DNA from: Octopus bimaculoides
Taxonomy: Eukaryota
NCBI RefSeq assembly: GCF_001194135.2
Contig: NC_068985.1
Location: 95,814,330 to 95,878,329, forward strand
Length of the DNA stretch: 64,000 nt
Reading direction: 5' to 3'
The notes under the pieces are model-generated. The model was not told where the DNA came from, searched no databases, and saw only the letters and a list, made by a program, of their open reading frames with translations. The position numbers and the translations under genes were made by a program. This document shows positions 18,017 through 42,161 of the stretch, piece after piece. The number at the start of each line of letters is the position of its first letter. Position 1 is the first letter of the stretch.

Positions 18017-18021
<5 letters not shown>

Positions 18022-18057
<36 letters not shown>
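18022..18057 (+). repeat. (GA)n microsatellite (another at about 18403-18432)
   Basis: Directly visible. Confidence 0.95.
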
Positions 18058-18064
<7 letters not shown>

Positions 18065-18397: not shown

Positions 18398-18438
<41 letters not shown>

Positions 18439-20475: not shown

Positions 20476-20814
20476 GAAAAATGTCATTTAAGGGAGTGTG
20501 GTCTTACATGATCCTGAAACCCCTGGCAGCTGATTACAAGATTTACTGTAGCATGGATGGATAATCTTACTATTCAGAGATCCATTCTGAAGCAAACTGG
20601 CAGCTAACTTTAATGGAGTGTGGGTGATCTGGAAGAACAGGGACAATACAGTGCCATCGCAGAGTTTGAGCTCTGGTCTAACAGTTAGCTTGACAATTTT
20701 TTAATAACTCAGCTATTATAATTCCAACAAAAAGTAACAAACTTCCAAGATTCTCAAAACTTAATTCTTTAACTATTCCATGACAATATTTCTAATGAAA
20801 CAGTTCCAGAATAA

Positions 20815-21340
20815 ACCTCACTGATGCTCTGGGATGCATCATTAGTGAGGTTTCTGGGGTTCCAGGGAGTTTCGAGCCTTTCAACATCAGATCCCTCTCA
20901 CCCACAGTTGACCCAATGGGGATTGATCAAGCCCTAGTTTGCATCCCAATAGTAACAAACCATTGGTCTGTCCTTTTTTTATCCAAAGTCACCTCGTGGC
21001 CTTTTCTGCAGCTTCAGCGATGGGATTTATAGCCCTCGTCCTTGCTGCACCATTAACTCCAAGCCCAGTTAGAGATTTGCAGAATAAACATCCCACAAAA
21101 CCCCTAACAGCCCACTTCAATTACCTCATAACACACCTGCCAGCCCTGGTTTCTGCACTGCTCTCTCAATCCTGGTATTTGGCAAACCTCCTGTCATAAG
21201 CCTCCATCTTCCCAGGGTACAGACAGTCCCCACATGATCTGGGAATTTGGTAAGATCTCTTTGTCTGGGGAGCATGTTGTTGGTACAATGTTTTCCACAA
21301 GATCCACTCTCAGTTGCCAATTTGACCCTATGGACATGTT
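20815..21340 (-). mobile_element. HERO-clade (RLE-endonuclease) non-LTR retrotransposon 3' remnant, decayed
   Basis: Frameshifted translation WQLRVDL..VPTTCSPD...LSVPWED / KMEAYDRRFAKYQD / EQCRNQGWQVCYEVIEVGC*GF / GAARTRAINPIAEAAEKATR*LWIK matches the PD-(D/E)xK RLE C-terminus typical of HERO/NeSL-group elements. Confidence 0.8.
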
Positions 21341-22098
21341 TTTCGCTTAATTTTGGAAATTGTAAACAATTTTGGAAGGAACTAGTAAAATAATTTATTT
21401 TGTCATTAAGATTTAACAAGATGCTCAGAAGTTTTTAAAAAATCAGTACACTGCTTAATTAATGAGGTAAATTATTAGATCTATAATGAATATATGTGAT
21501 AGTAAATCAATGACAACTTTGAAAAATGAATATTGAAACAAAAGTTTAGAATATCAAACATTTTTGTGATAGACATGCCAATATGGAACTGAAGTAAATA
21601 AAAAAAAATTCTTTTTTTTTTTTTTTTTCTGACTAGTTAAAGTGAAATATTTCATTGTGAAAGTATGAGATTAAAAACTTTTTGTATAACAATCTGGTTT
21701 TCATTTATAAATTACATTATCAAATGAAAATGTGTTAATGACCAACATTAACAGGTCATAATTAACTAATTCTATTTAGGCTGGCTAAAAAAAAGTAACC
21801 CATAACCATCCTCTAACCATATTTTCGGTAAAAACAGCTTGTGTTTTATAAAATGAATCAAAGGCCTTCGCCATATATATTGACTATAGAAAATGGTCTA
21901 AAATTAGAGCATATAAACCCCAGTAATGGAAACAAAAAAAGGCATTGTACTAATGCCCCATTTTTTCCATTTTAGGGGATTATACGCCCTAATATTAGGT
22001 TATTGTCTGTAGCTAATATAAAGTTTATAATTCAATTTACAAAATTTCATTCACTGCTGTTTATTAACTCATGCAGAATTTGCACAGAGTGTGTTTTT

Positions 22099-22430
22099 TA
22101 TTCTTTTACTTGTTTCAGTCATTTGACTGCGGCCATGCAGGAGCACCACCTTTCATCGAGCAAATCGACCCCAGGACTTATTCTAAGTGACAGAGACATA
22201 AACACACCAACATCGGTTGTCAAGCGATGGTGGGGGGGACAGACACAGACACAAATAACAAACGCACATACATATATACAACAGGCTTCTTTCAGTTTCC
22301 ATCTACCAAATCCACTCACAAGGCTTTGGTCGGCTCGAAACTATAGTAGAAGATACTTGCCCAAGGTGCCACGCAATGGGACTGAACCCAGAACCATGTG
22401 GTTGAGAAGTAAGCTTCTTATCACACAGCC
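22099..22430 (-). mobile_element. Family A SINE, near full length
   Basis: Reverse complement of 15918-16295. Confidence 0.85.
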
Positions 22431-23490
22431 TCCCATGTTTATTTTAATTTTCTTTTACAAATTCCTTTAGCATTTATGGTACCTAATAGAAATATAAAAA
22501 CCTTGTACTTTACTGGTACTTCATTTCAAGGGTCTTGGAAAGATGAAAAGCAGAGCTGATGTTGTTAGGATAGGAACTCAAAAAGACCATAACTAAATAT
22601 TTGTAAGATTTAAAATATCAATATTTTAAAACTTTGGAAGGATTTAGCACACGCACACACGAAACACACAGAATTAATCTGGCAGCTGGAACAGAACAAA
22701 GGGTTCTTAAATAGAATTATAATGCAAGATTGCAATTTAAATAAGAATATTTTAAGAAAGGTGGATTTTGTATTAGAGCCAGAGGCAGATTGGTATTACA
22801 AAGGTTAGACTATAGTGTAGCCAGATTATCAACTCTTCACAGCAGATTATTTAAATCCTAATTTACATAAACTGAAGTAATTGTAAACTAAGTTTGATTA
22901 TGAAATCACTTGAAGCAGAATTGTAGAAGTGCCAGGTTTGAGTAAATGGCAAACACTTTTGATAGGAACTTGTCTGAGATTTCTCACAAGATTTGTGAAC
23001 AACAAGTTCCCCTGTTTTACACTAATTTGCATTAAAACCTTCAATCAAAATTTTATGTTAACGTGTGTTCCAAGCTCCAGCTTAATAATAACGTTTAATT
23101 TACTAAATTCTTTGTTATTTTCAAAATAAAGTGAAATAAAGATAGTTTATTTACTTCCACAGAAATACGGCAACAAAAAGGTTAAAAATGACCATCTGAA
23201 CGGGGTCAATGCCAGTAGCCCCTGATTGGCCCACGTGCCGGTGTCACATAAAAAGCACCCACTACATTCTCAGAGTGGATGGCATTAGGAAGGGCATCCA
23301 GCTGTAGAAACTTTGCCAGATCAGATTGGAGCCTGGTGCAGCCTCCTGGCTTGCTAGTCCTCAGTCAAACTGTCCAACCCATGCCAGCATGGAAAACAGA
23401 CATTAAACGATGATGATGATGAAGTACTCTCACTATCTGACACTCCGTTTATGATGTCAGTGGATGACACCCATGGAAAACAAAGAGATT

Positions 23491-23755
23491 AGGCGCAGGA
23501 GTGACTTGGGCCAACCAAAGCCTTGTGAGTGGATTTGGTACGGTGGGAACTAAAAGAAGCTCGTCGTGTGTGTTTGTCCCACACTACCACCACTTGACAA
23601 CCGATGGTGTGTTTATGTCCCCGTAATTTAGCGGTTCAGCAAAAAACACTGATAGAATGAGTACTAGGCTTACAAAGAATAAGTCCTGGGGTCGATTTGT
23701 TTGACTAAAGGTGGTGCTCCAGCATGGCCACAGTCAAGATAACTGAAACAAAAGA
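23491..23755 (+). mobile_element. Family A SINE with internal deletion
   Basis: aggcgcaggagtg head fused to the post-CORE body and tail. Confidence 0.8.
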
Positions 23756-24288
23756 AATGAGGAAGAAAAAAAAAAAGAAAAGATTAAATGAGATGAGATG
23801 AAGCTGAACCTTACAAATATGGTAATGAGATACCAAAGCAACAGGTAGTAGTAGTAGTAAGAGAAGGAGGAGGTTGTAGAGGGTGGACAGTGGCAGAAAT
23901 GGTAGAGTGTTGAACGAAATACTTTGCAATATTTAATTACATTTTGAGTTCAAATTCTGCCCAGGGCAATTTTGCATTTTATCTTTCCAGAGTTGATAAA
24001 ATAAAACAATCAAGCAATGGTGGGTGAGTAGAAGGAACATAATAGATAGTCAGCGCCAAAAATACATGAAAAAAAAAAAGAAAAAGACTATATTGTACAG
24101 CAAGCCTGTCTCAGATCATAACAACATTGGGACCCTGGATATAACAATGAAAACTTTGTTTCTAAAACTGAAGAGCTTTAATTTACATCCACAAATTGAT
24201 GGTATGGAAGAACAACAAACTAGTGTTTGCTATGGAAGAACAACAACATATTATATGTCACACTTTTGAAGTGAATAAGGGTAATTAA

Positions 24289-24420
24289 CCTATAAAGCAT
24301 TGGGATTTGTGCTTACATCGCATGGACTGCTGAGCACATTCTATGAAAATGAGACTACCATGCACACAAAAAAAAAAAAATAGTTAAAATATTTTCTTAG
24401 TATATAATGCTGGCAACTTT
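24289..24420 (+). mobile_element. Left end of piggyBac-like MITE family E2
   Basis: TTAA|cctataaagc... collinear with 53141-53278. Confidence 0.65.
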
Positions 24421-24439
24421 CTCTGTCATGGTCAACATG

Positions 24440-24620
24440 ACAATCACACGCTACACACCTTCCTTCCAAGTACTTCTGTAAACAGTGGAAGTGAGCTAGA
24501 ACGTTAAAACTTAGTGCACATGCACAGCAGAGTTGAAGGTCAATTTGTACCAGCAGCTTCACTGCATGCTTTAGCTTTATTACTACGGTAACAGTCCGGA
24601 TACTTATTGATCAGACCATG
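24440..24620 (-). mobile_element. Mariner-like terminal fragment
   Basis: Minus strand begins tggtctgatcaataagtatccggactg, a mariner TIR-like sequence. Confidence 0.5.
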
Positions 24621-24636
24621 TGTGTGTGTGTGTGTG

Positions 24637-24672
<36 letters not shown>

Positions 24673-24975
24673 GAATATGTGTGTGTGTGAATGAGTGTCT
24701 GTTGCTGTCTGCTTGACTGTGTGATAGTTGTAAACAAGTGTTACAACAAAGCAAGCAATGTACTTTGTTTCTTGTTTTCCATGAAAACACGTCTAGTCCT
24801 TTATTTGGAAGCAACAATGGAAATGTGAACATTTAAATACTGATGATGAGAATTGTCAATTTTAAAAACCTCCAGAGGTCTCTCTCTTTCGCCATTGCCT
24901 CTGCATCTTCACAGTATCTTTACAAAACTCCTTTCAGGCTATAAATTCATCAAATAACAAACCATTAAAACTTAC

Positions 24976-24990
24976 AACTGCGCCTGACCT
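24976..24990 (-). other. Candidate 15-nt microexon AGGTCAGGCGCAGTT
   Basis: Preceded by tcttctcttatcctttcgttttctag and followed by gtaagt. Length is a multiple of 3 and no frame contains a stop. Confidence 0.4.
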
Positions 24991-25745
24991 CTAGAAAACG
25001 AAAGGATAAGAGAAGACAGATGATGATTACCACAGTCAAGAGTATCATATGTCGTAATTCATTTAAGATTAACTTGCCTAACAGAACACTTCAGATGCCG
25101 GCATATCAATAGCATTTATGTTTAGATTGATGCGTTAGATGGAATGAATTATAAACAAAAGTATTTAATGCCATGATGAACATCATTTAATGTTTACTTT
25201 CCAAATGTTTGCATGGATCGGACAGAATTGAGGCAGATTTTTTCAAGATTATTTACAACCAGACGCACTTCATGTCACCAACATTTATTTATTTATGTTT
25301 TTCAGGGAAGGGTTTATTCCTGCAGGAATTCAGAAATGTGAAGTTAATGGACAATTTGTTGACAAGAAATATCAACAAGGTCCACCAGCTGCAGCCCAAT
25401 CCTTGTTTGTGGCAGAGTTGCAGATGTTGATGTTACACATACGCACAGCTAAGCATAGTTTGGTAAACATCCACTTATCCACACGTGCACACACCATGCA
25501 TGCATGCACGCGCGCACCCACACACTTTCATATGCACACACAATGGACTTCTTTCAGTTTTCATCTTACAAGTTCTCTGAAAAGGCATTGGTCGGTGCAG
25601 GCCTTATAGTTGAAGACACTAACCCAAAATGCCGCAAACTGAAGATGCATGGTTCAAGAAAAGAACACTTAACATCCAAGCCTACATAAATATGTAATTC
25701 AGGAGATCAATGAGTATTGAGATATGGAAATTAACAAAAGCAGTC

Positions 25746-25838
25746 ACTCTCTCTAGATCTGATGAAGTAAACTGCTGATGAGTTGGCAATGACCAGGTGA
25801 AACTCAAGTTATTCTTCTTTTCATTCTATAGAGAGAGT
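25746..25838 (+). ncRNA. Decayed hammerhead-like motif within a 10-bp inverted repeat
   Basis: CTGATGA (25775-81), G-TTGG-caatga-CCAG, GAAA (25799-802), then ACTCAAGT, which is one CpG-type change from the palindrome ACTCGAGT. Flanked by ACTCTCTCTA/TAGAGAGAGT. Confidence 0.4.
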
Positions 25839-27510
25839 CATAGAGTTTAACTACAGAATCTATTTACACAAGGCAAAGCATATGTTAATTCTATGTTCAC
25901 ATGTAAATTGATTAACAAACTTACCCAAAGCAACTTAACATTATGAAAGAGGTTAATTACAAGAAAGAAAACAACCCATATTAATAGACGTTAGGAAACT
26001 AATCTCTATAAATCTATTCACACCAATATGCAAATAAATAAAAAATAACAAGCTATTTTATATTTAACTGACAGTATCTTAATTACAATCTCTAATCTAT
26101 AATCGACAGTTCTTTGATCTTTGCAAAGAATGCCATTCCAATGTATTGTATTTCCCAACTCATTTACTAGTCTGGCTCATCAATACGGCCAAAGTATGTA
26201 GATAAATAGCTTAGTGATCTTTACGAAATTGTAAGAGAGACAATGTATAAACCACATTATTTAATCTCCATGCACCATGCTGGTGTGGGTGGGATGATTT
26301 ATCAGGATCTCACAGGTCTGCTAAATGCATCATGTTCCAGTATCTGCTTATGTATGGTTTCTACAGCTGGATACTTTTTTTCCTAATGCCAACCACATTA
26401 CAGGTTGTATTGAGTGCTTTTTTTAAGGTTTATTATTTATTTATTTTTGTGCCATGAGCACCAGTGAGGTCACCATGTAGCTTGCAACACTGCAAACCCA
26501 GAGGGGGGTAGCTTTATGATAGAAAATGAAGAAGGTCAAAGTATGTGATAAGGGACTAACAGAAGGGGGCTTCTAGCTGGAGAGGAACTATACAACTATA
26601 CATATTTTAGAAGAGAGGGTGGGAGTGACCAGACAGGGGTGGAAAGAGAGGAGGAGGAGTGGACTCTTAAGGTATGAAGTGTGTAGCAGTGAGNNNNNNN
26701 NNNNNNNNNNNNNNNNNNNNNNNNNNNNNNNNNNNNNNNNNNNNNNNNNNNNNNNNNNNNNNNNNNNNNNNNNNNNNNNNNNNNNNNNNNNNNNNNNNNN
26801 NNNNNNNNNNNNNNNNNNNNNNNNNNNNNNNNNNNNNNNNNNNNNNNNNNNNNNNNNNNNNNNNNNNNNNNNNNNNNNNNNNNNNNNNNNNNNNNNNNNN
26901 NNNNNNNNNNNNNNNNNNNNNNNNNNNNNNNNNNNNNNNNNNNNNNNNNNNNNNNNNNNNNNNNNNNNNNNNNNNNNNNNNNNNNNNNNNNNNNNNNNNN
27001 NNNNNNNNNNNNNNNNNNNNNNNNNNNNNNNNNNNNNNNNNNNNNNNNNNNNNNNNNNNNNNNNNNNNNNNNNNNNNNNNNNNNNNNNNNNNNNNNNNNN
27101 NNNNNNNNNNNNNNNNNNNNNNNNNNNNNNNNNNNNNNNNNNNNNNNNNNNNNNNNNNNNNNNNNNNNNNNNNNNNNNNNNNNNNNNNNNNNNNNNNNNN
27201 NNNNNNNNNNNNNNNNNNNNNNNNNNNNNNNNNNNNNNNNNNNNNNNNNNNNNNNNNNNNNNNNNNNNNNNNNNNNNNNNNNNNNNNNNNNNNNNNNNNN
27301 NNNNNNNNNNNNNNNNNNNNNNNNNNNNNTTAGAAATGTCTAAAACAATAATGGTAGGTTAGGATGCCATTGAGGAAATCTGGTAGAGTAATTTCATACT
27401 AAAAATACTTGTGTACTTAATTTTGATGATGTTACATTCCTGTTTACTTACAGCCAACACCCATGGCATCATCTGTTATTTTTCCAGTAGAAGGGAACAT
27501 GTGACTGTGA

Positions 27511-27512
<2 letters not shown>

Positions 27513-27560
<48 letters not shown>
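27513..27560 (+). repeat. (TG)n microsatellite (others include 10237-10258, 24620-24670, 29594-29639, 32374-32444, 32978-33022)
   Basis: Directly visible. Confidence 0.95.
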
Positions 27561-27562
<2 letters not shown>

Positions 27563-28299
27563 TGGGAAAGGGAGGTAACCTGCAAGTCAAGGCAGTCAAA
27601 ACATCTCAAACAACTGCAAGCAGCAGTTTGTAATTACTAAAATAAACCAAATATAATAGAATGAAAACTATGTTTCTGCTACCAGGAATATAGTGTTTGG
27701 AACATTGTAGGTGGCAAGAAATTTGTAATCAATACAAACCAAATAAAACAAAATCAATAAGTTCAATGGTATTGAAAAGCTATTGATTCATTCAACAACT
27801 AGAACCAGTTTCAAACTCTAGCCAAATCCCAATTTAGCTTTAAGCTGAAAAAAACTAATTACTTCTTAAAATCTACTTCACACAAATAGCCAGCATACAA
27901 AACAATAATTAAAGGAACTGGGAAATACCATTGGGTATTTATTTATAGAATTAGCAAGGAAACTGCTAAAATTTTATTTAAGAAATTTTTGCAAGTATAG
28001 ATGACTGTGTGGTTAAGAAGCTTGCTTTGCAACCAGCAGTTTTGGGTTCAGATCTACTGCATGGCACCTAGAGCAAGTGTCTTCTACTATAGCCCTGAGC
28101 TGACTAATGCCTTAGGAATGAATTTAGTAGATGGAAACAGTATGGAAGCACATGTGTATGTGGTGTGGGGTGCACTTATGTCTTCATGTTTGCCTCACTA
28201 TTTGACAACCAGTGTTGGTTTGTTTACATTTGATAACTTAGCAGTTCAGCAAAAAGGGGTAATAGAATAAGTGCCAGACTTTAGAAATAAAAAGAAAGA

Positions 28300-28757
28300 G
28301 GTTAAGACTCTGCTGCCTAGAACGAAGGCAGGAAAGATCTTAGAAGGATCTGGAAAATCCTGGAAAGATTTGTAACAAACTTGGTCGTAGAAAATTACAC
28401 AACCAATAGTACAGGACGTCAGTGCCTAATGACAAAGATCCCAACATCACCATCAAGGTACAGGACCAGATACTGCAACAGCTTTAGTTTCAAGGGCCCA
28501 CAGCTCTTCAAGATCCTCCCCAAAAAAGCCTGAGACACCTGCATGAGATGGATGTAGGTGTCTTCAGGACAAAATCTGTCAAGAGTTCCAGATGAGCCGA
28601 TCTCATGGCAGAACACAGAGATGAGGACAGCAGCATCAAACTCCCTCATTTACGAAATACCACATATCAGAGGAGGCTTCAAATAATGAACGTGTAGCAA
28701 AAGTAATGGCAGTGCCCCAGCATGGCCACAGTTCTCAAACTGAAACTGGTTAAAGAG
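28300..28757 (+). mobile_element. CR1-clade LINE 3' remnant (ORF2 C-terminus plus 3' tail)
   Basis: LRLCCLERRQER..WKILERFVTNFG / NSTGRQCLMTKIPTSPSRYRTRYCNSFSFKGPQLFKILP / VPDEP..MRTAASNSL, a CR1/L2-group C-terminal pattern. Confidence 0.8.
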
Positions 28758-28917
28758 TTACAGAGAGGGTTGATTTGTTCAAATTAAACTCAAGGTGGTG
28801 CCCCAGTATGGCCAATGATACAAAATGAAAAAAATAATGCTATCAACCATTGAACTGGATGGGGAAGTTGTTCATAGAAAGCTGCCATGCAAAACTAGAC
28901 TGTCGGTAAAAACTCAC

Positions 28918-29024
28918 CTGGAAAGAGTTGTGACCTACAAATATTGAATTCACCTTACCAATAACTGATCGTCGTTACCGAAAGTCAACAACATTTCAAC
29001 TTACCTAAAAAAGAAAGAAAAAAT
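28918..29024 (-). promoter_or_regulatory. Candidate recursive splice site (ratchet point) with 87-nt RS/poison exon 28918-29004
   Basis: Minus strand gtattttttctttcttttttag|GTAAGT, then a second donor CCAG|GTGAGT 87 nt downstream. All three frames contain a stop codon. Confidence 0.5.
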
Positions 29025-29090
29025 ACTATGAATGTTGTTGGAATTTTAAATCAAAGGATTTATATAAACATAACAATCAATTTGTAAGTA

Positions 29091-29546
29091 AAGTTCTGGC
29101 CAAAAGTCACCTGACAGTAAATTAAAACCCATTTAATTCCAAGAATAAAACAAAAAGTTATTTTATGAGACTTTGCTAATAAATAGACAAAAAAGACAAA
29201 AAAAAAACGGTAATTTTAACTCACAAAATTCAATTATTAAACATTCATAATTGGAATGAATAAATAAAATTGAATATTAAGTTCAAATTACGACAAACGT
29301 AAATAAACAAATGAAGTTTGCTTTTAGAAGCGTTGAGATGTCTTTAGAAAGTTAAACGATTTTTTAAAATTCTCAATCTGTCCACAGCTAGCCACCTACA
29401 CTTTTCTCTGCAAAATAGGGTTAGTTTATCCTGTTCAGGCTATATTATTAGCATTATTCTGCGATTGAGAATTTATTAAAAAATCATTGAATATTTAGTA
29501 TTTATGGAATTTTGACCTACTGTCAGGTGACTTTTGGCCAACACTG
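29091..29546. mobile_element. Tc1-like MITE (456 bp)
   Basis: TA flanks at 29089-90 and 29547-48. TIR core tggccaaaagtcacctgacagta is perfectly inverted, and resembles the Tc1 terminus CAGTGCTGGCCAAAA. Confidence 0.85.
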
Positions 29547-29590
29547 TATATATAAGTATGGTACAAGAAAAAACCCCATTAAGATGAAGT

Positions 29591-29642
<52 letters not shown>

Positions 29643-30344
29643 ATATCTATAATGCTATTGTCACTTGAAATCTAAACTTATCTTAACACCTCTAGAAATT
29701 AGCATTATTCATCCAAGGCCTTGTAATAATGCCAAACAGAAGCAGATTAAGAAGAGAAAGAAAGAGAGCAGAAACTGACTCACATAATGAGCAAGAGAAG
29801 ACAAAAGGAAAAACGAGAGATGAAACAATGGCTGTACTCATCTGAGAAGTACTTGAAAATACCAAGTCATCCTTTAATTAATGGCAGTAAGAATAAATAA
29901 ACCAGTGGAACATTCAGGTTGGAAAAGAACTGTGCAAATGCCAAAAAGTTAAAAAGTAAAAAAAAAAAAGTAAAAATATGTAAATAAATAAACAGATGCA
30001 GATGTGGGAAGAAGCTTGCTTCTCAATCACATGATTCCAGGTTCAGTCCCACTGCAGGACACCTTGGGCAAGTGTCTTCTATTATAGCCCTGGGTTGACC
30101 AAAGCCTTGTGAGTGGATTTGGTAGATGGAAATTGAAAGAAGCCCATCGTGTGTGTGTGTGTGTACCCTACATACACCATGGTTGTGTGGTAGGAAGCTT
30201 GTTTCTCAACCACATGGTTCTGGGTTCAGTCCCACTGCGGGACACCTTGGGCAAGTGTCTTCTACTATAGCCCTGGGTTGACCAAAGCCTTGTGAGTGGA
30301 TTTGGTAGATGAAAACTGAAAGAAGCCTGTTGCATGTTTGTATG

Positions 30345-30515
30345 CATATAGTCGTGTCAACTGCAACAGTCCCCCAGTGCCCAAGCTGCAGCCAAACCTT
30401 CAAGAGCGCACATTGGACTGATTGGCTCCAAGATAGACGCAACCTACCCGCTTTTCTTCTCCCATGTGATATCCTTGGTTATCGTCAACAATGAAGGACA
30501 AACTGATATGATTGT
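30345..30515 (+). mobile_element. RTE-clade LINE 3' remnant
   Basis: CPSCSQTF / FRAHIGLIG (frameshifted C-terminal zinc-finger-like motif typical of RTE), followed by a short 3' UTR gtcaacaatgaaggacaaac. Confidence 0.7.
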
Positions 30516-30641
30516 GTGTGTGTGTGTGTGTGTGTATGTATCATTGTGTATGTGTTTGTTCCCACACCCCTGCTTCACAACCAGCTTTGGTTTGTTTATA
30601 TCCCCCATAACCTAATGGTTTAACAAAAGAGACCGATAGAA

Positions 30642-30816
30642 CAGTGCTCCACAACTGGTATGCCATGGCACACTGGTGTGCCACGAGATGATGCTCATAA
30701 CCTGAATATAACTTTTTTTTCCCTATACCTTTAATTATACTCTTAGCTCAAGTGTGCCACCAAATTTTGAGAAGAATTTAAGTTCAATGCAAGTGAAAAA
30801 ATGTCACAGCGCACTG
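30642..30816. mobile_element. hAT (Charlie-like) MITE inserted in a SINE
   Basis: CAGTGC...GCACTG termini and an 8-bp TSD cgatagaa/caatagaa that reconstitutes the SINE motif gaccgatagaataag. Confidence 0.8.
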
Positions 30817-32367
30817 CAATAGAATAAGCACCAGGCTTTAAAAAAAATAATAAAAAGTACTGGGGGTTGATTTGTTTCGTTAAAAGTCATTTAAGGTGGT
30901 GCCCCAGCTTGGCCACAATCCAATGACTGAAACGAATAAAAGATAAAGGATAAAAGATGAAAATGAATAAAAGAGATTTTCTGCAGAAACTAAAATTTTC
31001 TGTAAATGACATGTTTCTTTGAAAGAAATGAAAAGAAAAGGAAGACAATACAAAATTCTTTGTGTGAAGAAGACATCATCAATAGTGCCATGTTGGTAAA
31101 CTGCAGATATTCAGAAGCAGAAAGAGAGGGGGGGAAGAGCGGGTGGATGGTGGAGGTGAGATTTTTGTCTGGTTTGTGTTGGCAGCTGGAAGTTGGTTGG
31201 ACGCTGCTATAAAAGAGCTTAATTCTACCATCAAAAGATAAAGGCAAGTAAGGAGACATTAAGCAAAAGAGATCCCAGTAGATTCAGCTTTCTTTAATCT
31301 CTACATTCATATCAGTTAAGAGATAAGATTCGTTTTTTTTCCTTCTTACATTTTAGACGCAGTTTTCAGAATTGCATCACAGCCAATCTACAACTTGAGG
31401 GAGAGTGTGAGGGGAAAGAGCTAGAGAGAGAGAGAGAGGAGCTAGTGAGCAAGGGAGTGAAAGACAGAGAAAAAGAGAGAGTGAAAGAGCCAAGAGGGAG
31501 AGAGAGAAATTTCTGTATGTTTTGTTAGAAAATTATAATAAAACCTCTTCATATACAAACTTCCACACATCGTTCTCTCCTGCTCCTCCTCTCTCCCCTA
31601 ATTAATATCCATCACACAACTATTAATTAGGACTTATTTGATTAGGACAATTTTCATTGCTTTACCTCCAAGACAAATTTATTGCTCTTTCCTATGATAC
31701 TTTCAGCTTTCTCATTGCTAAATCTGAATTGCAGGTTTCTAATTGTCAATTCTTCTCTGTCTGTCTCTCTCTCTCCACACACACACACACACACACATAA
31801 TGCAAATAGGGATTTTAAATGTATGTAGTTAATGTTTTGTGTTGCTACAATTGGACACCAGAGTTGTGCACCACGGCTATGTTTTTGCTGTCATCCTCTG
31901 TGTGTGCATGTGTGTGCACGTGCACGAGATTCGAGTATGTGGGTGTGAAAAGCTTTCACTAATCCTCAACAAGTACCCTGATAGAATCCAGATTTGGCTA
32001 ACCACATCGAATGATAGAAAACATTTAGAATTATTTAGAATAAACAAACTGTACCACATCTGATTTGCAAGTCCCGAGTTCACTTCAACGGATTTCATGA
32101 AGAATACAGAGTATATTGAGGCACCGGATTTTAGTATACATTACAGAGTATATTATCAAGACAGAATAATTGTGAATGGAGATTTATACATCTTTAAAAT
32201 TTATTTATTAAAAAACATCTTCTTCATATTTCATTCTGACATGTGTGTCTGCGGATCTGTGTGTCTTAGAATATTTATTCAGCAGAAACACATCAGGATA
32301 AAATATGAAGTAAATGTTTTTTTATTACATAAATGTTGAAGATGTGTAACTCTGATGTCTTTGTCTT

Positions 32368-32448
<81 letters not shown>

Positions 32449-32460
32449 TATATACACATA

Positions 32461-32620
32461 CAGGGTGCGGTGAATAAACTGTCATCTAAATTACGCAAAA
32501 AATGAAAATAACAATGACGTCTCATTTTTTACAGATATATTGACCAAAATGACATAAAAATATCTTGAAATACTAAAGAGTAAATTTATTCAATAAAATC
32601 GCCATTGGCTTCAACCACGG
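32461..32620 (+). mobile_element. Tc1/mariner left-end fragment
   Basis: TA|CAGGGTGCGGTGAATAAA terminus. Confidence 0.55.
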
Positions 32621-32975
32621 TTAAGGGTATTAAATTCATTCCTTCTCAATTACAACAATACATTGTTCAGCCACATCAGGAATATAAATTAGTGTTTCAT
32701 TATACACTCAATGATAGATATTTTGAAGCGGTTTTACGGGAATAAAAGTATGGCTCTGTGGATATAAATACAATCCTGTGACAGTGACTGGAATGCAGTA
32801 ATCATAAATTACATTATACAAGTATGATATTTCAATTTTTTTTTTCCTCTTGTTTATATTTGGGTAAAGAGAATTGATATACAGGATGTAAAACTCATAT
32901 TTCTGGTAATGATATTCTGCGTTTCTGCAATTAGACACCAGAGTTGTGTACCACGGCTATGTTTTTGCTGTCATC

Positions 32976-33025
<50 letters not shown>

Positions 33026-33674
33026 ATGCATGTGCACGAGATTCGAGTATGTGGTTGTAAAAAGCTTTCACTAATCCTCAACAAGTACTTATATACTGAC
33101 ACTGGTATAATCCCAAGTCAAAATAGTCTGACGTCGTAACTGGGCTTAAAATTGAAAAACAAGAAGCTCTATTTTACAGCTATACTAGAGAGAAGAAAGC
33201 AAAAAAAGAGATAAAGAGGATGGGAAAAGCAACCAGAGAACAAAAGTGAGAGAGAAACAAAGTGCTATCCATTTACATATTTAAATGGATTCATATTTAG
33301 TCCGAGATCAACTTGTAGCAGAGCTACAATAGAAAAGGGTGCAGTCATAACGATTCCATCTTGCTTTCAAACAATATATTTTTCACAACTAAATTATCCA
33401 ATATAACTTTCCAATTTTTTTCCTTATAAAATTTTAAGATATGAAAGAAATTTAACTGCAATTTCTAGACAGATTTCATGACAGGCTAATTTTTCCATAA
33501 GCCAATTCAGGAAAACGATCAGTGCCTGCTGACATTCTTGGAGGAAAATTACGGCAAATTAGAGTCACGTATTTCTAGAAACACTATGCTGATATCTGTG
33601 GAGGCATGTGGATTAGCCAGTGGCACTTCCGACTCCTCTTTATGTAATCAAGTGATTGTGGTCTACATATCCCA

Positions 33675-34065
33675 CAGTCATTTTGACTGTGGCCATGCTG
33701 AAGCAGTGTTTAGTCGAGCAAATTGACCCCAGTACTTATTCTTTGTAAGTCTAGTACTTATTCTATCAGTCCCTTTTGCCGAACCGCTAAGTTACGGGGG
33801 ACCTAAACACACCAGCATCGGTTGTCAAGCGATGGTGGGGGGACAAACACAGACACACAAACATATACACATACATACATATACACATATATATATATAT
33901 ACATATATATATACGACGGGCTTCTTTCAGTTTCTGTCTACCAAATCCACTCACAAGGCTTTGGTCGGCCTGAGGCTATAGTAGAAGACACTTGCCCAAG
34001 GTGCCACGCAGTGGGACTGAACCTGGAACCATGTGGTTGGTAGGTAAACTACTTACCACACAACC
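33675..34065 (-). mobile_element. Family A SINE, near full length (further A copies at about 27990-28290 +, 38690-39000 -, 41595-41945 +, 42803-43010 +, 55720-55870 -, 56045-56400 +, 57965-58335 -, 59491-59810 +, 60320-60415 +, 62115-62255 +, 62881-63231 -)
   Basis: Collinear with the reference copy. Confidence 0.85.
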
Positions 34066-35271
34066 TAGCTTACCAAAAAAAAAAAAAAAAAACAGCCATA
34101 AAACATCTCAAAGATTATATGTATAAACAGAAAAGGCAGATAAAAAGTAAGGCAAGAGCATACAATAAATGAATGATGTAGCCTTATCTTAACAGCTGTT
34201 TCGAATAAACACTGACTGGTGCCATAACTATGTATGTAATGACATTTATTATATGTATATAACACAACATGTATGTATATTGTAAAAGAGTTAGTGTTAG
34301 GATGGACATCTAATCTAATCACTGAAACCAAAATTGAAACAAGTAAGATGAGGACATTCCCACCACCCTGGGCCCATCTAGGTGAGCTGTATCCACCAAA
34401 TATGTGCTGATTGATGAATGACCTGTTCAACTCATACTAAAATGGAAAGCTGATGCAAAGTGGTGGTGATGGGAGTGCCAATGGTGATGATGGGAATGAT
34501 GATGATGATGACGATGATATATTACCACCATTCTTAATGTCATTTTATTCATTTAGTGTTTTGATTAGCAGTATGAAAGAAGAAATTGGCTTATTTTAAT
34601 GTGTTGTATGATCTGAAATAACAAAATAAGTTGCTGAATTTCTCATTAAGTAAATTATTTTATATCAACAAAATGAAAGGCTAGATATTTTAACTATATA
34701 AACATAATGTGTTATTAAGTAAACGAGCAGCGAAAATTGGTTAAATAAAACATAGAATAGAAATGAGTTAGTCACTGCCTCTCAGTTGAAAGTAATAAGT
34801 CCCAGCTGAAATGAATGAGAAGTTAGATGCCTGGTCTCTGATAAGTAGAGAAGCAGATTCCTTGTACCAAATTATTTTTGAGGATTTCATGAGGATCTTT
34901 AAAATATTTTTATTTGAAAAAAGAAAATTTTAACCTTCTTGCTACCAACCAACCTAAAGCTGCCCAACTGGTTCTAAGACACAAACTTCTTATTTTAAAG
35001 TGACATAAATTAATACTGGCCATCAAAATTTCATGCTCATTTATGTTCTAAACACTAGCTGAATAAATTAATGACAAAGGTATTATATTAAATTCATCAT
35101 TATTTTCAGTATTAATTAAAACAAAATCGGTGTATTTCAGCAGAAATATATTAACGAATGGCTCATTTAGGTTCCAAATAACAGCTTAATAAAATAATCA
35201 GAAAGGTATTTTACTTAATTCATAATTATTTTCAAGATTAACTGACAAAGTCAGTGTTTTGGTTTTTTTTC

Positions 35272-35485
35272 TTTTCTACTCTAGGCACAACACCTGAAAT
35301 TTTTGGGAAGGGGGCCCAGTAGATTAGATCAACCCCATTATGCAACTGGTACTTAATTAATCAACCCTGAAAGGATGAAAGGCAAAGTCGACCTCAGCAG
35401 AACTTGAACTTAGAACGTAGCAGCAGAGGAAATACCGCTAAGCATTTTGCCCAGTGTGCTAATGTTTCTGCCAGCTTGCTGCCTT
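35272..35485 (-). mobile_element. Family B SINE
   Basis: Full family B consensus. Confidence 0.85.
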
Positions 35486-35542
35486 AAATTCAGTGTATTT
35501 TACCTGAAGTATGGTAATGGTAACAAAAATAGTGAAAACCTA

Positions 35543-35640
35543 AATGCATTAGACACATACTTGAATGCATTAGACGTACACTTGGATGCATTAGACGCAT
35601 TAGACGCACACTTGGACGCATTAGACACATACTTAGACAG
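35543..35640 (+). repeat. Minisatellite, ~21-bp unit cttggatgcattagacacaca with one 9-bp subunit
   Basis: About 4.5 units visible. Confidence 0.85.
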
Positions 35641-35790
35641 ACACACACATTTTATAATTTTTTTAGTACCTCCTTCAACCACCATTTGTTACCAAAATAG
35701 TGACAAATTGAATCCAAAGAGTAATGACCTGTAATCTCCATAACCCAAACAATATCACTGAGAAATGTTGAACACATTTTAGCTCTAATA

Positions 35791-35870
35791 CAGGGGTCTC
35801 CAAAGTGGTCGATATCGACCCCCGGGAGTCGATGGGACTATTCAAGGGGTTGATAAATGCCTGGAAACTG
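35791..35870 (+). mobile_element. hAT-like left terminus (similar termini at 50935 and 63397)
   Basis: CAGGGGTCTCCAAAGTG; also CAGCAGTTCCCAGACTTT and (T)AGTGTTTTTCAACCTTTT. Confidence 0.5.
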
Positions 35871-36185
35871 CACGTCATTTGCTACCAGTTATTGACTTGC
35901 TAAGGGGTAGTAGCAGACTCCATAATATTGTTTCCAGATATTGAACACCGTTTTGCGGTACACATTCAACTGCTTTGTTAAGTCCTTGTTGCTCATTCCA
36001 GTTGCAATCTGGTCGCATTTTGCTTTCAATATCATGTTTGTTTACAAACCTGTTATAGATGAACAAAGCAATAGACACATGAACTAAAGACATATGCGAA
36101 TCTTTATGTAAAATGTAGATAATATTACTTGAACTGATATTTAGGAAGAGTTTTCAACATGGAAAAATCTTTCTGGGACACCCTG
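35870..36185 (-). mobile_element. Tc1/mariner 5' fragment with transposase N-terminal HTH remnant
   Basis: TA|CAGGGTGTCCCAGAA terminus at 36185. Translation KAKCDQIATGMSNKDLTKQLNVYRKTVFNIWKQY. Confidence 0.7.
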
Positions 36186-39100
36186 TACTTTACAAATTGG
36201 CTCTCATTTGCACAGTAGCTCCAATTTTGGAGTAAACCCTGCTGAAGTTATGTAGGAGGGTTATGAGCTAAACTCCAATCTGTCACCAAGTAACTAGTTT
36301 GTGACATCCAGTAAGGATTATGTTATTTTAACCTCTCAACACAATAAACATTCTTCAGTCCCATAATTGCTTTAAACTATACACTCCCTTTCTGCTAGTC
36401 CAGACTTTAAGGTTTAACATACACATCAAACAATTGTTCCTTTGAATATCATTGTTTCTCCGATATTTTAGGTCATTGGCATCTTGTGCCCACTTTTTTT
36501 TCTTTTTGTTTTTCATACTTGCATGGGTTGGACAGACCTCAGTATCTTGTCAATCTTTACTCTGGTATGTCTCATGACAATAATTTCATAGATCTAAGAG
36601 TCATACATCAGATCATGAGCCAATGTCCCAGTTCATAGCTCAATATATGAAGTTAAAAACAGTAAACAGAAATGTGGCCATGACGAAGATATTTTTTTTT
36701 TAATTGTTGGCTTTGTTGTAACCTTTTCATAAAATACAGTCATTGTCACAATTAATTTTGAAAATAATGATGAAGTTAATAGAATGACTAATGTATTTTT
36801 CTAACTCATTAGTGCCCAAATTTAATTTTATTACCAAAAAATTTTTTATATAACTTTATTTCATACTAAATATATAAAAAAAATTTTTATTACAATATTT
36901 GAAAGGCACTCCAAAGATATCTCAGAAAAATACAGGTTACAGAAATATGATGGATTATCCTTCTGGTCCTAAAAAAAGGACCATGGGCACTAGCTGGTGT
37001 TTGGAACATAAATTAACGTAGTTGACGTTAGGAAGAGCATCCAGCTGTAGAAACTCTGCCAAATCAGATTGGAGCCTGGTGTAGCCATCTGGTTCGCCAG
37101 TCCTCAGTCAAATTGTCCAACCCATGATAGCATGGAAAGCAGACATTAAATGATGATGATGATGTTTCAATGAAAAGCTTTACCCTTTTGTTATCATATT
37201 TATGCTGAAGTGAAAAGCCTTTGTTTTAATTAATTTTGAAAATTAACGAATTTAGTAAAATAAGTTACCATACTGAATGCACACAGTGGGACTGAACCCA
37301 AAACCATGTGGTTTTGAATCAAACTTCTTACCAGACAGCCAAGCTTGCGCCAATGTACAAATATACATTATATATTATAGGCTTCTTTCAGTTTCCATCT
37401 AGGAAATCCACTCACAAAGCTTTGGCCAGCTAGGGACTGTAATAGAGTACACATGCCCAGGGTTGGACTGAACCTGAAACCTATGTGTTTGGTAAGCAAA
37501 CCTCAAAATAATACAGCCATGCCTGCATCTATATTTTTCAGACAAACCCCGTTGTCTCCTCAGGAGAAATTCAACTGCACTAATTGGTGCAGTACAATTA
37601 AAAATAAATAACTACGTAAAGAAGATTAATAATAGCAATCATGACAGGGTTTACCTTGGTTGAAGAAAGTTATGATCGAAGGCATTCTGAACATGACCAT
37701 CCCATCCCATCTTTTTCCGTAAATGCCAAGAACTGAGGACCACTTTATCCAATATGTTCCACTCTAATATGATGGAGTGAGATTTGAGAGATTTTGGCTG
37801 CTATTTCTAGCAGATCAAGTGACCATGTAAAGACACTCAATGTTATTCTGAAATGTTAGCCAACACAATGAACGAAGGAATAAAATTTTAAAAGTTAAAA
37901 ACAAAAAAATTTTTTTTTTAATGAAATTTCAAATATGATAAGGACTAAGTCTCTTGGATTAAATTACCAAATAAATAGAAACCAATTAAAAAGAGTAAAT
38001 CTTTTATGTGAAATTTTCAATTATTCCCCACCCACCCGTTCGCCCCCACCTCACACACACACCTACTGTTTTGTTAACGCCACATGTAACAGACAAGATA
38101 GCAGGCTAAAACTCAACAATTTTCTTTGTATCAACACCAGTAGCTGGGTTGACAAAATATCTTGATAACAGCACAACTGTCAAGCCACTCCATCCCACAC
38201 TGCAATGACTGGCCCCACCCCTTTTACATGTTTTTCTTCTAATATCCAGAAGCTTAAAATGGGTCACATACACAAAACGTTATCTTTTTATCATCACCAT
38301 CATTGTAATTATTTTTACATCCGCTTTCGCTTTTTTTCTTAGGGTTAAATGAAACTTACTAATGTGGTTAGTATTCTATGGCTGGATGCCCTCGTTAGGG
38401 GCCAGTCGTTTATTTTATTCCACAAGTCTTTGCACCCTGAAACTGCTGAGATGCAAGACATTGAGATAGATGTAAACAATGTGCTAATGTTGCTCAGACA
38501 ACGTCATTGAGAAGACATACAGTTATATATGCATACATACACGCATGCAAATATATCCATGCATACATATGCATGCGAACATATGTGCATAGATATGCAG
38601 GCATACATATGCACATATGCATAAAAGCATGCTTTTATGCATGTGCATATCCACACAAACATATGCACGCAAATATGTGCACATACCTTATCTTTTACTT
38701 GTTTTAGTCGTTAGATTGTGGCCATACTAGAGCAACACCTTGAACTGATCACAGTACTTTTTTTTAAGCCTGGTACTTATTCAATCAGTCCCTTTTTGCA
38801 AACCACTATGTCATGGGGGTGTAAACACCCCAACACCAGTTGTCAAGTGGTGGTGGGACAGACACAGACACACGACAGGCTTCTTTCAGTTTCCATTTAC
38901 CAAATCCTCACAAGGCTGTAGTAGAAGACACTCGCCCAGTGGGACTGAACCTAGAACCATGTGGTTGGGAAACAAGCTCCTATCCACACAGCCACACATG
39001 CGTCTACGCATACTAATATAGGCACACTTATGCATACAAACGCATACACAGATATGCCTGCATACATATGCATAGACACACACACGCACACACATACATA

Positions 39101-42108: not shown

Positions 42109-42117
<9 letters not shown>

Positions 42118-42158: not shown

Positions 42159-42161
<3 letters not shown>

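What the first reader, a model, noticed from the sequence alone, without database searches (positions are those of the whole stretch)
28912..29024. Near-perfect recursive splice site with a poison RS-exon midway through a putative giant intron
Seen: minus strand gtattttttctttcttttttAG|GTAAGT, a long pyrimidine tract and AG directly abutting a consensus donor. A second strong donor CAG|GTGAGT follows 87 nt later, and the interval has stops in all frames (GGT AAG TTG AAA TGT TGT TGA in the frame of exon 1). It is co-oriented with, and 32 kb downstream of, the claudin-like exon donor, in non-repeat sequence. Established: this is the architecture of ratchet points and RS-exons in long Drosophila and vertebrate introns. 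Inference: recursive splicing in a cephalopod, which I do not know to have been described, with the RS-exon acting as an NMD switch.
Basis: partly seen in the sequence, partly recalled or inferred. Interest (0 to 1): 0.78.

Follow-up and report, generated by a model that had tools for sequence, protein, structure and literature searches.

The report
Conserved octopus recursive splice site candidate
In the middle of a 64-kb intron of an octopus claudin-like gene lies a back-to-back acceptor/donor splice signal with a short stop-containing pseudo-exon; an argonaut has the same arrangement at the matching place, so the intron is probably removed in two steps, though no RNA data yet show it.

Summary
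The window is Octopus bimaculoides chromosome DNA. The exon at 61333..61063 (-) is the first coding exon of LOC106879687, a 204-aa PMP22/claudin-family protein. Exons 2 and 3 lie beyond window position 1, so intron 1 is 64,080 nt. The tttttAG|GTAAGT site splits it into 32,058 and 32,022 nt.

The motif is rare by chance: about 0.001 per 61.5 kb on both strands under a Markov null.

Conservation in O. sinensis proved uninformative, because antisense look-alike sites are also kept.

The decisive result is Argonauta hians, a different octopod family whose intron is otherwise unalignable. The same intron carries, on the sense strand, ttgttttatttttctgttttAG|GTAAGT followed 64 nt later by CAG|GTAAGA. 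It sits about 1.5 kb upstream of the same single-copy conserved block. A composite score fixed beforehand gives P about 0.0007. Only the two splice signals are conserved; the pseudo-exon body is not. That is the signature of fly ratchet points with cryptic RS-exons.

A chiton ortholog has a 42.8-kb intron 1 and no such site.

Verdict: probably a real recursive splice site, and a new member of a known kind. RNA evidence is missing, and the NMD-switch idea is untested.

The parts
61063..61333 (-). First coding exon of LOC106879687 (PMP22/claudin family). It encodes residues 1-90 plus one base, so it ends in phase 1.
   Evidence: Translation. 100% match to XP_014784850.1/P0002. Pfam Claudin_2 and PMP22_Claudin pass their cut-offs on the full protein.
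61057..61065 (-). Native 5' splice site of exon 1, CAG|GTAAGT.
   Evidence: The exon boundary is shared with O. sinensis, Argonauta, a chiton and other mollusc contigs.
29005..61062 (-). First intron segment, 32,058 nt, proposed to be removed in step 1 as a lariat.
   Evidence: Coordinates. Its removal as a separate step is inferred.
29028..29032 (-). Candidate branch point ttcAt, with the A at 29029, 24 nt before the AG.
   Evidence: Read. It fits yUnAy. O. sinensis has ttaAt and Argonauta has ctgAt at about -25. The motif is degenerate, so this is inference only.
29007..29023 (-). Polypyrimidine tract: 17 uninterrupted pyrimidines, with TT at -5/-6.
   Evidence: Only 0.2% of AG dinucleotides in the loci have 18 or more pyrimidines in the preceding 20 bases. 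In flies 99.5% of ratchet points have TT at -5/-6 (Duff et al., 10.1101/006163).
28999..29006 (-). Ratchet-point core AG|GTAAGT: a 3' splice site abutting a 5' splice site.
   Evidence: It is identical in O. sinensis and Argonauta hians.
28918..29004 (-). Cryptic RS-exon, 87 nt, with stops in all frames.
   Evidence: It is 88 nt in O. sinensis and 64 nt in Argonauta, and its body is not conserved between Octopus and Argonauta.
28985..28987 (-). In-phase TGA, the seventh codon after the exon-1 junction. If the RS-exon were included it would cut the protein to 96 aa.
   Evidence: The same stop is present in O. sinensis, and Argonauta has TAG at codon 11.
28912..28920 (-). RS-exon 5' splice site CAG|GTGAGT, proposed to define the cryptic exon by exon definition.
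   Evidence: It is the top-scoring donor on the minus strand of the window with a rough PWM. It is kept in O. sinensis. Argonauta has CAG|GTAAGA at the matching place, followed by similar sequence (TTTTACYRAC).
1..28917 (-). Part of the second intron segment (32,022 nt counted from the regenerated donor at 29004). It runs about 3.0 kb past window position 1 to exon 2.
   Evidence: Exon 2 is at L002 74352-74495 and exon 3 at 76078-76277. Window x = 71334 - L002 coordinate.

Best explanation
This is an intronic recursive splice site (a ratchet point) with a cryptic RS-exon. It lies in the 64-kb first intron of the Octopus bimaculoides claudin-like gene LOC106879687 and was inherited from the common ancestor of Octopodidae and Argonautidae.

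Proposed mechanism:
1. Once RNA polymerase has transcribed the first 32 kb, the 87-nt cryptic exon is recognised by exon definition. U2AF/U2 bind the 17-nt pyrimidine tract and AG, and U1 binds the downstream CAG|GTGAGT.
2. Exon 1 is spliced to position 29004, which releases the first 32-kb segment as a lariat.
3. The new junction regenerates CAG|GTAAGTT. This is identical to the native exon-1 donor from -4 to +7 and fully complementary to U1.
4. The regenerated donor outcompetes the RS-exon donor and is spliced to exon 2, 32 kb further on. That removes the cryptic exon together with the second segment, so the mRNA shows only exon 1 joined to exon 2.

What is shown: the sequence anatomy, the gene structure, the rarity of the motif, and its conservation at an orthologous place in a distant octopod.

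What is inferred: that the site is used at all, the order of the steps, and which donor wins.
For: 1. Anatomy. A 17-nt pyrimidine tract, AG|GTAAGT and a strong donor 87 nt downstream.

2. Context. The site is on the sense strand of a 64,080-nt intron of a RefSeq gene whose exons 2 and 3 lie downstream. It sits at 50.0% of that intron, and at 52.4% in gap-free O. sinensis. Fly introns with a single recursive site tend to have it near the midpoint, and 63% of fly introns over 40 kb are recursive (PMC6110457).

3. Rarity. About 0.0013 per 61.5 kb on both strands, and 0 of 100 shuffles. A strong donor within 30-200 nt is expected at about 0.4% of sites.

4. Replication in Argonauta hians.
- The orthologous 47.6-kb intron can be aligned to Octopus only in repeats and a few single-copy blocks.
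- Its best sense-strand AG|GT site is ttgttttatttttctgttttAG|GTAAGT, with CAG|GTAAGA 64 nt later.
- The site lies 1,492 nt upstream of a single-copy block; the Octopus site lies 1,516 nt upstream of the same block.
- Null probabilities are 0.00025 for the motif definition and 0.0007 for a composite score whose matrix was fixed, before Argonauta was seen.
- Antisense strands and the chiton intron score within the null range.

5. Pattern of conservation. The AG|GTAAGT core and the downstream donor are kept while the exon body and its length (87, 88, 64 nt) are not. This is the pattern described for fly cryptic RS-exons (PMC8605326). A conventional cassette exon gives no reason for its first six bases alone to stay GTAAGT.

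6. Donor competition. The regenerated donor CAG|GUAAGU matches U1 at 9 of 9 positions in all three species. The RS-exon donors match at 8 of 9 (GUGAGU in Octopus, GUAAGA in Argonauta). This agrees with the rule that ratchet-point donors are the stronger.

7. TT at -5/-6, as in 99.5% of fly ratchet points.

8. Mature transcripts lack the cryptic exon: the RefSeq models, and a Logan cDNA with CTTCCAG|TTTGGTA.
Against: - There is no RNA evidence: no junction reads, lariats or saw-tooth coverage could be examined with these tools.
- Only one distant species replicates the site. Squid, cuttlefish and nautilus could not be reached.
- The chiton ortholog has a 42.8-kb intron 1 without such a site, so a long intron in this gene can be spliced without one.
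- Conservation between O. bimaculoides and O. sinensis does not discriminate. The 119-nt block is 95.8% identical against 89% for the intron, only about the 93rd-95th percentile, and antisense AG|GTRAG sites are mostly kept too.
- AG|GTRAG 7-mers show no strand bias in the intron, 6 sense against 7 antisense.
- My splice-site matrix is home-made from vertebrate-like frequencies. By it, the RS-exon donor in Octopus scores as high as the regenerated donor (13.2 against 12.8), so skipping is not guaranteed.
- The thresholds used were chosen after seeing the Argonauta site.
- The exact 50.0% midpoint depends on N-gap sizes (2.7 kb of N in the intron).
Confidence: 0.7

Rival explanations
1. This is a conventional alternative cassette exon: a poison or non-coding exon, 87 nt in Octopus and 64 nt in Argonauta. 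It is spliced in or skipped in the ordinary way, and its first six bases are GTAAGT without ever being used as a donor.
For: A strong acceptor and a strong donor flank a short interval in three species. In-phase stops are present in all three. In Octopus the downstream donor scores as high as the regenerated one.
Against: - The exon body and its length are not conserved, while the six bases GTAAGT directly after the AG are invariant across families. A cassette exon has no need for that.
- The inclusion product is not in the protein collection.
- The gene models and the cDNA lack the exon.
Confidence: 0.12
2. This is a non-functional pseudo-exon. Good-looking splice signals arose by chance in a very long, T-rich intron, and the Argonauta copy is a coincidence or neutral persistence.
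For: - Long introns hold many decoy sites. Seven other sense AGs in this intron have an acceptor score at least as high.
- A second strong AG|GT at 78% of the intron has no downstream donor.
- A repeat family carries AG|GTGAGGGT in both orientations.
- The first-stage reader selected this site from an unknown number of windows.
Against: - The composite is expected about once or less per genome by my rough estimate.
- The independent Argonauta test gives P of 0.0003 to 0.0007.
- The Argonauta site lies at the orthologous position, in sequence that is otherwise saturated.
- The antisense strands and the chiton intron show nothing comparable.
Confidence: 0.08
3. This is a conserved intronic element that binds U1/U2 but acts otherwise. 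It could be a decoy exon that slows or blocks removal of the intron (regulated intron retention), or a U1-recruiting site that suppresses premature cleavage and polyadenylation in the long intron.
For: Both splice signals are conserved while the cryptic exon never appears in mRNA. Decoy exons with essential splice sites are described for retained introns (PMC7373989, abstract listed).
Against: Neither model requires the acceptor and donor to abut exactly. The central position in a 48-91 kb intron fits recursive sites. Described decoy exons act in much shorter introns.
Confidence: 0.07

Closest known systems
Drosophila intronic ratchet points with cryptic RS-exons (Ubx, kuz, Bx and others; Hatton 1998, Burnette 2005, Duff 2015, Joseph 2018/2021, Pai 2018)
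   Same: - A juxtaposed Yn-AG|GTAAGT with TT at -5/-6.
- A host intron over 40 kb, with a single site near the intron centre.
- A short cryptic exon ended by a second donor.
- A cryptic exon that is non-coding and poorly conserved, while the acceptor|donor core is invariant between distant relatives.
- A regenerated donor at least as strong as the exon donor.
- A cryptic exon that is absent from mRNA.
   Different: - The phylum is different (Mollusca, Lophotrochozoa).
- The cryptic exon is somewhat longer, 64-88 nt against about 50 nt.
- The base at -3 is T rather than the usual C.
- No RNA intermediates have been observed here.
- It is unknown whether such sites are enriched genome-wide in octopus, as they are in flies.
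Vertebrate recursive splice sites with RS-exons in long neuronal genes (Sibley et al. 2015; EJC repression, Blazquez et al. 2018, PMC6224609)
   Same: The model is the same: exon definition of an RS-exon, ligation to the upstream exon, then competition between the regenerated 5' splice site and the RS-exon donor, with a premature stop if the exon is included. The host genome is also repeat-rich with very long introns.
   Different: The vertebrate cases sit in introns or genes of hundreds of kb and are few. The host here is a small three-exon claudin-like gene. A 'binary switch' tied to upstream promoter or exon choice has not been examined here.
Zero-length / NMD dual pseudo-exon (Grellscheid and Smith 2006, cited in PMC5126111)
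   Same: A single element could behave both as a zero-length recursive exon and, when its own donor is used, as a stop-containing exon that leads to NMD.
   Different: That case was shown experimentally. Here inclusion has never been seen, and whether NMD follows the 50-nt rule in cephalopods is not known to me.
Poison cassette exons (Lareau et al. 2007 type)
   Same: A short exon with an in-frame stop more than 50 nt upstream of the next junction.
   Different: Classical poison exons are highly conserved along their whole length and are seen in transcripts. Here only the two splice signals are conserved.

Membership tests
Intronic recursive splice site (ratchet point) with cryptic RS-exon | A 3' splice site (pyrimidine tract plus AG) directly abutting a 5' splice site (GTRAGT) | tested here: met
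   17-nt pyrimidine tract followed by AG|GTAAGT at 29023..28999. The same core is present in O. sinensis and Argonauta.
Intronic recursive splice site (ratchet point) with cryptic RS-exon | Lies on the sense strand inside a long intron (over about 10 kb) of an expressed gene, with the next real exon downstream | tested here: met
   Intron 1 of LOC106879687 is 64,080 nt, and exons 2 and 3 were found downstream in the same chromosome record. That the gene is expressed rests on the RefSeq model and on an orthologous cDNA contig.
Intronic recursive splice site (ratchet point) with cryptic RS-exon | A downstream 5' splice site that defines a short cryptic exon | tested here: met
   CAG|GTGAGT at +87 in O. 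bimaculoides, at +88 in O. sinensis, and CAG|GTAAGA at +64 in Argonauta.
Intronic recursive splice site (ratchet point) with cryptic RS-exon | Regenerated donor at least as strong as the RS-exon donor | tested here: inconclusive
   By U1 complementarity the regenerated donor matches 9/9 against 8/9 in all three species. By my rough matrix the scores are 12.8 vs 13.2 (O. bimaculoides), 12.8 vs 13.0 (O. sinensis) and 12.6 vs 11.2 (Argonauta). No calibrated cephalopod splice-site model was available.
Intronic recursive splice site (ratchet point) with cryptic RS-exon | Acceptor|donor core conserved beyond the neutral background, with a poorly conserved cryptic exon body | tested here: met
   The O. 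sinensis comparison does not discriminate. The core and the second donor are kept in Argonauta at an orthologous position, in an intron that is otherwise unalignable, and the body is not conserved. P = 0.0007.
Intronic recursive splice site (ratchet point) with cryptic RS-exon | Splicing intermediates: upstream exon-to-site junction reads, two lariats, and a saw-tooth in nascent or total RNA | not testable with these tools
   No read-level RNA data can be reached. The only indirect look was negative and weak: the exon 1 + RS-exon product is absent from the protein collection.
Intronic recursive splice site (ratchet point) with cryptic RS-exon | Sense-strand enrichment of such sites in the long introns of the genome | not testable with these tools
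   Only this one gene locus could be fetched, in four species. Published sense/antisense ratios cover sea urchin, fly, mosquito, bee, beetle and vertebrates, but no mollusc (PMC2773006).
Poison exon / NMD switch | An inclusion isoform exists and is regulated | not testable with these tools
   No inclusion isoform was found. The models and the cDNA skip the exon, and the exact product is absent from the collection. How well that collection covers octopus RNA is unknown.
Poison exon / NMD switch | A premature stop more than 50 nt upstream of a downstream exon junction | tested here: met
   TGA at 28987..28985 lies 67 nt before the RS-exon's 3' end. Stops are also present in O. sinensis and Argonauta.
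PMP22/EMP/claudin family (host gene) | Passes the Pfam family thresholds over the full four-helix length | tested here: met
   Claudin_2 scores 49.6 bits (cut-off 29.1) and PMP22_Claudin 42.8 bits (cut-off 26.7), covering residues 4-192.

The most novel reading that the evidence does not exclude
Recursive splicing through cryptic RS-exons is a general, ancient way in which coleoid cephalopods remove their unusually long introns, which would make it a pan-bilaterian mechanism. At this locus the near-equal strength of the two competing donors in Octopus would let the 87-nt stop-containing exon be included under some conditions. It would then act as a regulated off-switch for the claudin-like gene.
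Probability: 0.15. Interest if true: 0.65.

Novelty: new member of a known kind. Interest (0 to 1): 0.55.

Why it matters
Recursive splicing has been demonstrated in Drosophila and vertebrates. Motif enrichment alone has suggested it in a few other insects and a sea urchin (PMC2773006). I found no report for any mollusc or other lophotrochozoan.

Cephalopod genomes are full of very long, repeat-rich introns, and how these are spliced accurately is unstudied. This locus offers a concrete site to test, with exact predicted junctions (61063 to 29004, then 29004 to exon 2). It is conserved between two octopod families.

If confirmed, it would place the exon-definition form of recursive splicing in the third great bilaterian branch. 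It would also justify a genome-wide search in cephalopods. The finding does not change the known mechanism.

Tried and rejected
1. Exon-1 peptide search in the word-indexed protein collection. It returned only one genomic read-through fragment. The full-library HMMER search was needed to find the RefSeq protein.

2. O. sinensis conservation as a test of function. Rejected as uninformative: the intron is 89% identical overall, the site block is only at about the 93rd-95th percentile, and antisense look-alikes are conserved too.

3. O. vulgaris locus. The gene range is over 100 kb, so no DNA was returned.

4. RNA evidence by exact look-up.
- The exon 1 + RS-exon product (O. bimaculoides and O. 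sinensis versions), the exon-1 read-through product and four pseudo-ORFs around the site are all absent from the collection.
- I ran no further search on a 43-aa pseudo-ORF, because these exact look-ups showed that octopus genomic ORFs from this locus are not in the collection.

5. Repeat origin of the site. No other copy was found in the window or in 200 kb of loci.

6. A nested gene or non-coding RNA. The nine N-free window ORFs scanned (eight of the longest plus the two ORFs nearest the site, 89-155 aa; overlapping and N-containing ones left out) had no Pfam hit. Rfam gave only a tRNA-like hit 16 kb away.

7. A second candidate at window 11063 (78% of the intron). The donor is weaker in O. 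bimaculoides, there is no downstream donor, and there is no Argonauta counterpart. It is not counted as part of the feature.

8. Chiton ortholog. It has the same three-exon structure and a 42.8-kb intron 1 but no comparable site. The site is therefore not a mollusc-wide feature of this gene.

9. An apparent upstream anchor at about -630 nt between Octopus and Argonauta. It was discarded because it falls in a microsatellite.

Full report
**The observation**

All coordinates here are on the minus strand.
- The window reads catagtattttttctttcttttttAG|GTAAGTTGAAATG. The AG is at 29006..29005 and the GT at 29004..29003.
- The tract before the AG is 17 uninterrupted pyrimidines; 18 of the last 20 bases are pyrimidines.
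- A second donor, CAG|GTGAGT, has its GT at 28917, so the interval 29004..28918 is 87 nt.
- The interval has stops in all three frames. In the phase left by exon 1 it reads GGT AAG TTG AAA TGT TGT TGA.
- The upstream exon is 61333..61063: 271 coding nt, phase 1, donor CAG|GTAAGT.
- AGGTRAGT occurs only three times on the minus strand of the 64-kb window. These are the exon-1 donor and the two sites of the finding.

**How likely is it by chance?**
- Y18-AGGTRAGT with up to two mismatches matches only this site, and none of 100 dinucleotide-preserving shuffles gave a match.
- At the observed single mismatch, a third-order Markov model of the window gives 0.0013 matches per 61.5 kb on both strands.
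- In about 390 kb of real octopod sequence, only 0.2% of AG dinucleotides have 18 or more pyrimidines in the preceding 20 bases. AGGTRAGT occurs 2.6e-5 times per base, so a donor of that quality within 30-200 nt is expected at 0.4% of sites.
- Scaled to a genome of about 2.4 Gb (my own figure), the bare ratchet motif would arise by chance some tens to a couple of hundred times. The full composite would arise about once or less.
- These estimates assume independence, and the thresholds were chosen after the fact. They show that chance is unlikely but do not settle the matter.
- The site is single-copy in all the sequence I could check. SINE-like repeats begin about 100 nt downstream.

**What the locus is**
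- A full-library HMMER search with the exon-1 peptide found a 204-aa protein identical over all 90 residues. It is XP_014784850.1, uncharacterized protein LOC106879687 of Octopus bimaculoides, with orthologs in O. sinensis and O. vulgaris.
- It passes the Pfam thresholds for Claudin_2 and PMP22_Claudin.
- Its genomic locus (L002; GCA_001194135.2, CM046605.1) is 100% identical to the window in reverse orientation. Window x = 71334 - L002 coordinate.
- Residues 91-204 are not encoded in the window. Exon 2 is at L002 74352-74495 and exon 3 at 76078-76277, that is 3.0 and 4.7 kb beyond window position 1.
- Intron 1 is therefore 64,080 nt. The AG|GT site divides it into 32,058 and 32,022 nt, or 50.0%. 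The intron contains 2.7 kb of N, so the exact equality means little.
- In the gap-free O. sinensis assembly the site is at 52.4% of a 91.1-kb intron.

**Close relative: conserved but uninformative**
- In O. sinensis both splice signals and the in-phase stop are intact. The interval is 88 nt.
- However, the two introns are 89% identical over 42 kb of alignment. The 119-nt block around the site is 95.8% identical, only about the 93rd-95th percentile of intron windows.
- Most other AG|GTRAG heptamers are also conserved, including those on the antisense strand and in repeats.
- There is no strand bias of the bare heptamer: 6 sense against 7 antisense.

I therefore give this comparison almost no weight.

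**Distant relative: the decisive comparison**

A search with the full protein returned an ortholog in Argonauta hians (66% identity). It belongs to Argonautidae, a different family of incirrate octopods. The search also returned an ortholog in a chiton.

The Argonauta locus (L004):
- It has the same three coding exons and a 47,569-nt intron 1.
- That intron aligns to the Octopus intron only in multi-copy repeats and a handful of short single-copy blocks, so neutral sequence is saturated.
- Yet its sense strand carries ttgttttatttttctgttttAG|GTAAGTCA, with 17 of 20 pyrimidines and TT at -5/-6. A second donor, CAG|GTAAGA, follows 64 nt later.
- The interval again has an in-phase stop: GKSLFRSLSS, then a stop.
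- The site lies 1,492 nt upstream of a single-copy block whose Octopus counterpart lies 1,516 nt downstream of the Octopus site. The two sites are therefore orthologous, not merely similar.

The three-species alignment:
- The invariant stretches are TTTTAGGTAAGT and CAGGTRAG plus a short tail (TTTTACYRAC).
- The body of the interval is not alignable and differs in length by 23 nt.

Statistics for the Argonauta site:
- Under a third-order Markov null of the Argonauta intron, a sense-strand site with at least 16 of 20 pyrimidines plus AGGTAAGT appears in 0.8% of simulations. With AGGTRAG 30-150 nt downstream it appears in 0.025%. Those thresholds were set after seeing the site.
- I therefore also used a threshold-free statistic: acceptor score plus regenerated-donor score plus the best donor 30-200 nt downstream. 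The matrix was written, before Argonauta was known.
- By that statistic the Argonauta site scores 35.5. The null maximum has mean 25.6 and sd 2.3, giving P = 0.0007.
- The Octopus sites score 38.0 and 41.8.
- All antisense strands score 24-32, within the range of the simulated maxima (largest 36.3).
- In each of the three octopods this is the only AG|GT with a strong donor downstream.

The chiton Liolophura sinensis has the same gene structure and a 42.8-kb intron 1, but nothing comparable: 23.9 on the sense strand and 24.9 on the antisense strand.

**Interpretation**

The pattern has these parts:
- an acceptor and a consensus donor held exactly back to back across families;
- a second donor held 64-88 nt downstream;
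- a stop-containing interval whose sequence and length drift freely;
- a central position in a 48-91 kb intron;
- absence of the interval from mRNA.

Further fly parallels:
- TT at -5/-6 is found in 99.5% of ratchet points (10.1101/006163).
- Recursive introns range from 11 to 133 kb.
- Recursive sites occur in 63% of introns over 40 kb, and single sites lie near the midpoint (PMC6110457).

After ligation to exon 1 the junction reads ACTTCCAG|GTAAGTTG. It is identical to the native donor ACTTCCAG|GTAAGTTA from -8 to +7 and complementary to U1 at all nine positions. The RS-exon donors have one mismatch each: GUGAGU in Octopus and GUAAGA in Argonauta.

In Argonauta the native exon-1 donor is weak (CAG|GTTTGT), whereas the regenerated one is consensus.

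The mature message skips the interval. The RefSeq models and an assembled cDNA from a related species (71% identity) join exon 1 directly to exon 2 (CTTCCAG|TTTGGTA).

A plain cassette or poison exon would not explain why only its first six bases are invariant. A chance pseudo-exon would not explain the orthologous Argonauta copy.

I therefore favour a genuine recursive splice site, with confidence of about 0.7.

**What remains unshown**
- No read-level RNA data could be reached. Use of the site, the order of the steps and the winner of the donor competition are all inferences.
By analogy with flies, the default expectation is constitutive skipping.
- In Octopus the two donors score almost equally with my rough matrix (12.8 against 13.2), so occasional inclusion cannot be excluded.
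- Only one distant species replicates the site.

**Novelty**
- The mechanism is known. The phylum is new as far as I could find: no paper in the searchable library combines recursive splicing with octopus, and the cephalopod and mollusc hits are incidental.
- The one cross-species motif survey I read covers vertebrates, sea urchin and four insects, but no lophotrochozoan (PMC2773006).
- I rate it a new member of a known kind. It is of moderate interest, and its main value is as an exactly specified test case.

Noticed in passing
window 45220-45292 (+): A tRNA-Ser(GGA)-like sequence (Rfam 37.4 bits; ARAGORN agrees) inside the intron, next to an N gap and TA/CA microsatellites. The low score suggests a tRNA-derived repeat or a pseudogene rather than a working gene.
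   Followed up: no
window 11063 (-), = L002 60271; O. sinensis L003 80909: A second strong AG|GT at 78% of intron 1: tttttttttcttttttggtAG|GTGGGT in O. bimaculoides and AG|GTGAGT in O. sinensis. There is no donor within 260 nt downstream and no counterpart in Argonauta. It could be a younger or weaker recursive site, or a chance site.
   Followed up: partly
window 55665(-), 11196(-), 4351(-), 52857(+), 3144(+): A dispersed repeat family carries ttacttggaaacAG|GTGAGGGT, a donor-like AG|GT, in both orientations within the intron. Most copies are conserved in O. sinensis. This shows that 8-mer conservation between the two Octopus species says little.
   Followed up: partly
window 29089-29127 and 29510-29548: 39-nt inverted-repeat arms (84.6% complementary) about 460 nt apart and MITE-like. 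The nearer arm ends 65 nt upstream of the polypyrimidine tract of the recursive site. At least one arm is also present in O. sinensis.
   Followed up: no
L002, L003, L004, L006 (gene loci); L001: The three-coding-exon structure with a giant phase-1 first intron is old: chiton 42.8 kb, Argonauta 47.6 kb, O. bimaculoides 64.1 kb, O. sinensis 91.1 kb. The exon-1 boundary (...LP|G) is also seen in contigs of other molluscs, including the gastropod Bulinus truncatus.
   Followed up: partly
window 27356-27488 (-), = L002 43846-43978; Argonauta L004 41291-41646: A single-copy non-coding block about 77% identical between Octopus and Argonauta, 1.5 kb downstream of the recursive site. It is one of very few alignable single-copy pieces of the intron. 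Its function is unknown; here it served only as an orthology anchor.
   Followed up: no
window 28890-28911 (-); Argonauta L004 39869-39885: The sequence just after the RS-exon donor is similar across families, with 11 of 17 bases identical beyond the donor hexamer. In Argonauta it contains a perfect TACTAAC branch-point-like heptamer (GTAAGATTTTACTAAC). Octopus has GTGAGTTTTTACCGAC.
   Followed up: no
L004 10262-10285: In Argonauta the native donor of exon 1 is weak (CAG|GTTTGT), while the donor regenerated at the recursive site is full consensus (CAG|GTAAGT).
   Followed up: no
window 58625-59008 (-) and 62633-62875 (-): Two ORFs on either side of exon 1 share the motif RNWYL..RKDEKQSRPRRNLNSE, so they are copies of one repeat family. 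The copy at 58625-59008 had no Pfam hit; the other was not scanned.
   Followed up: no
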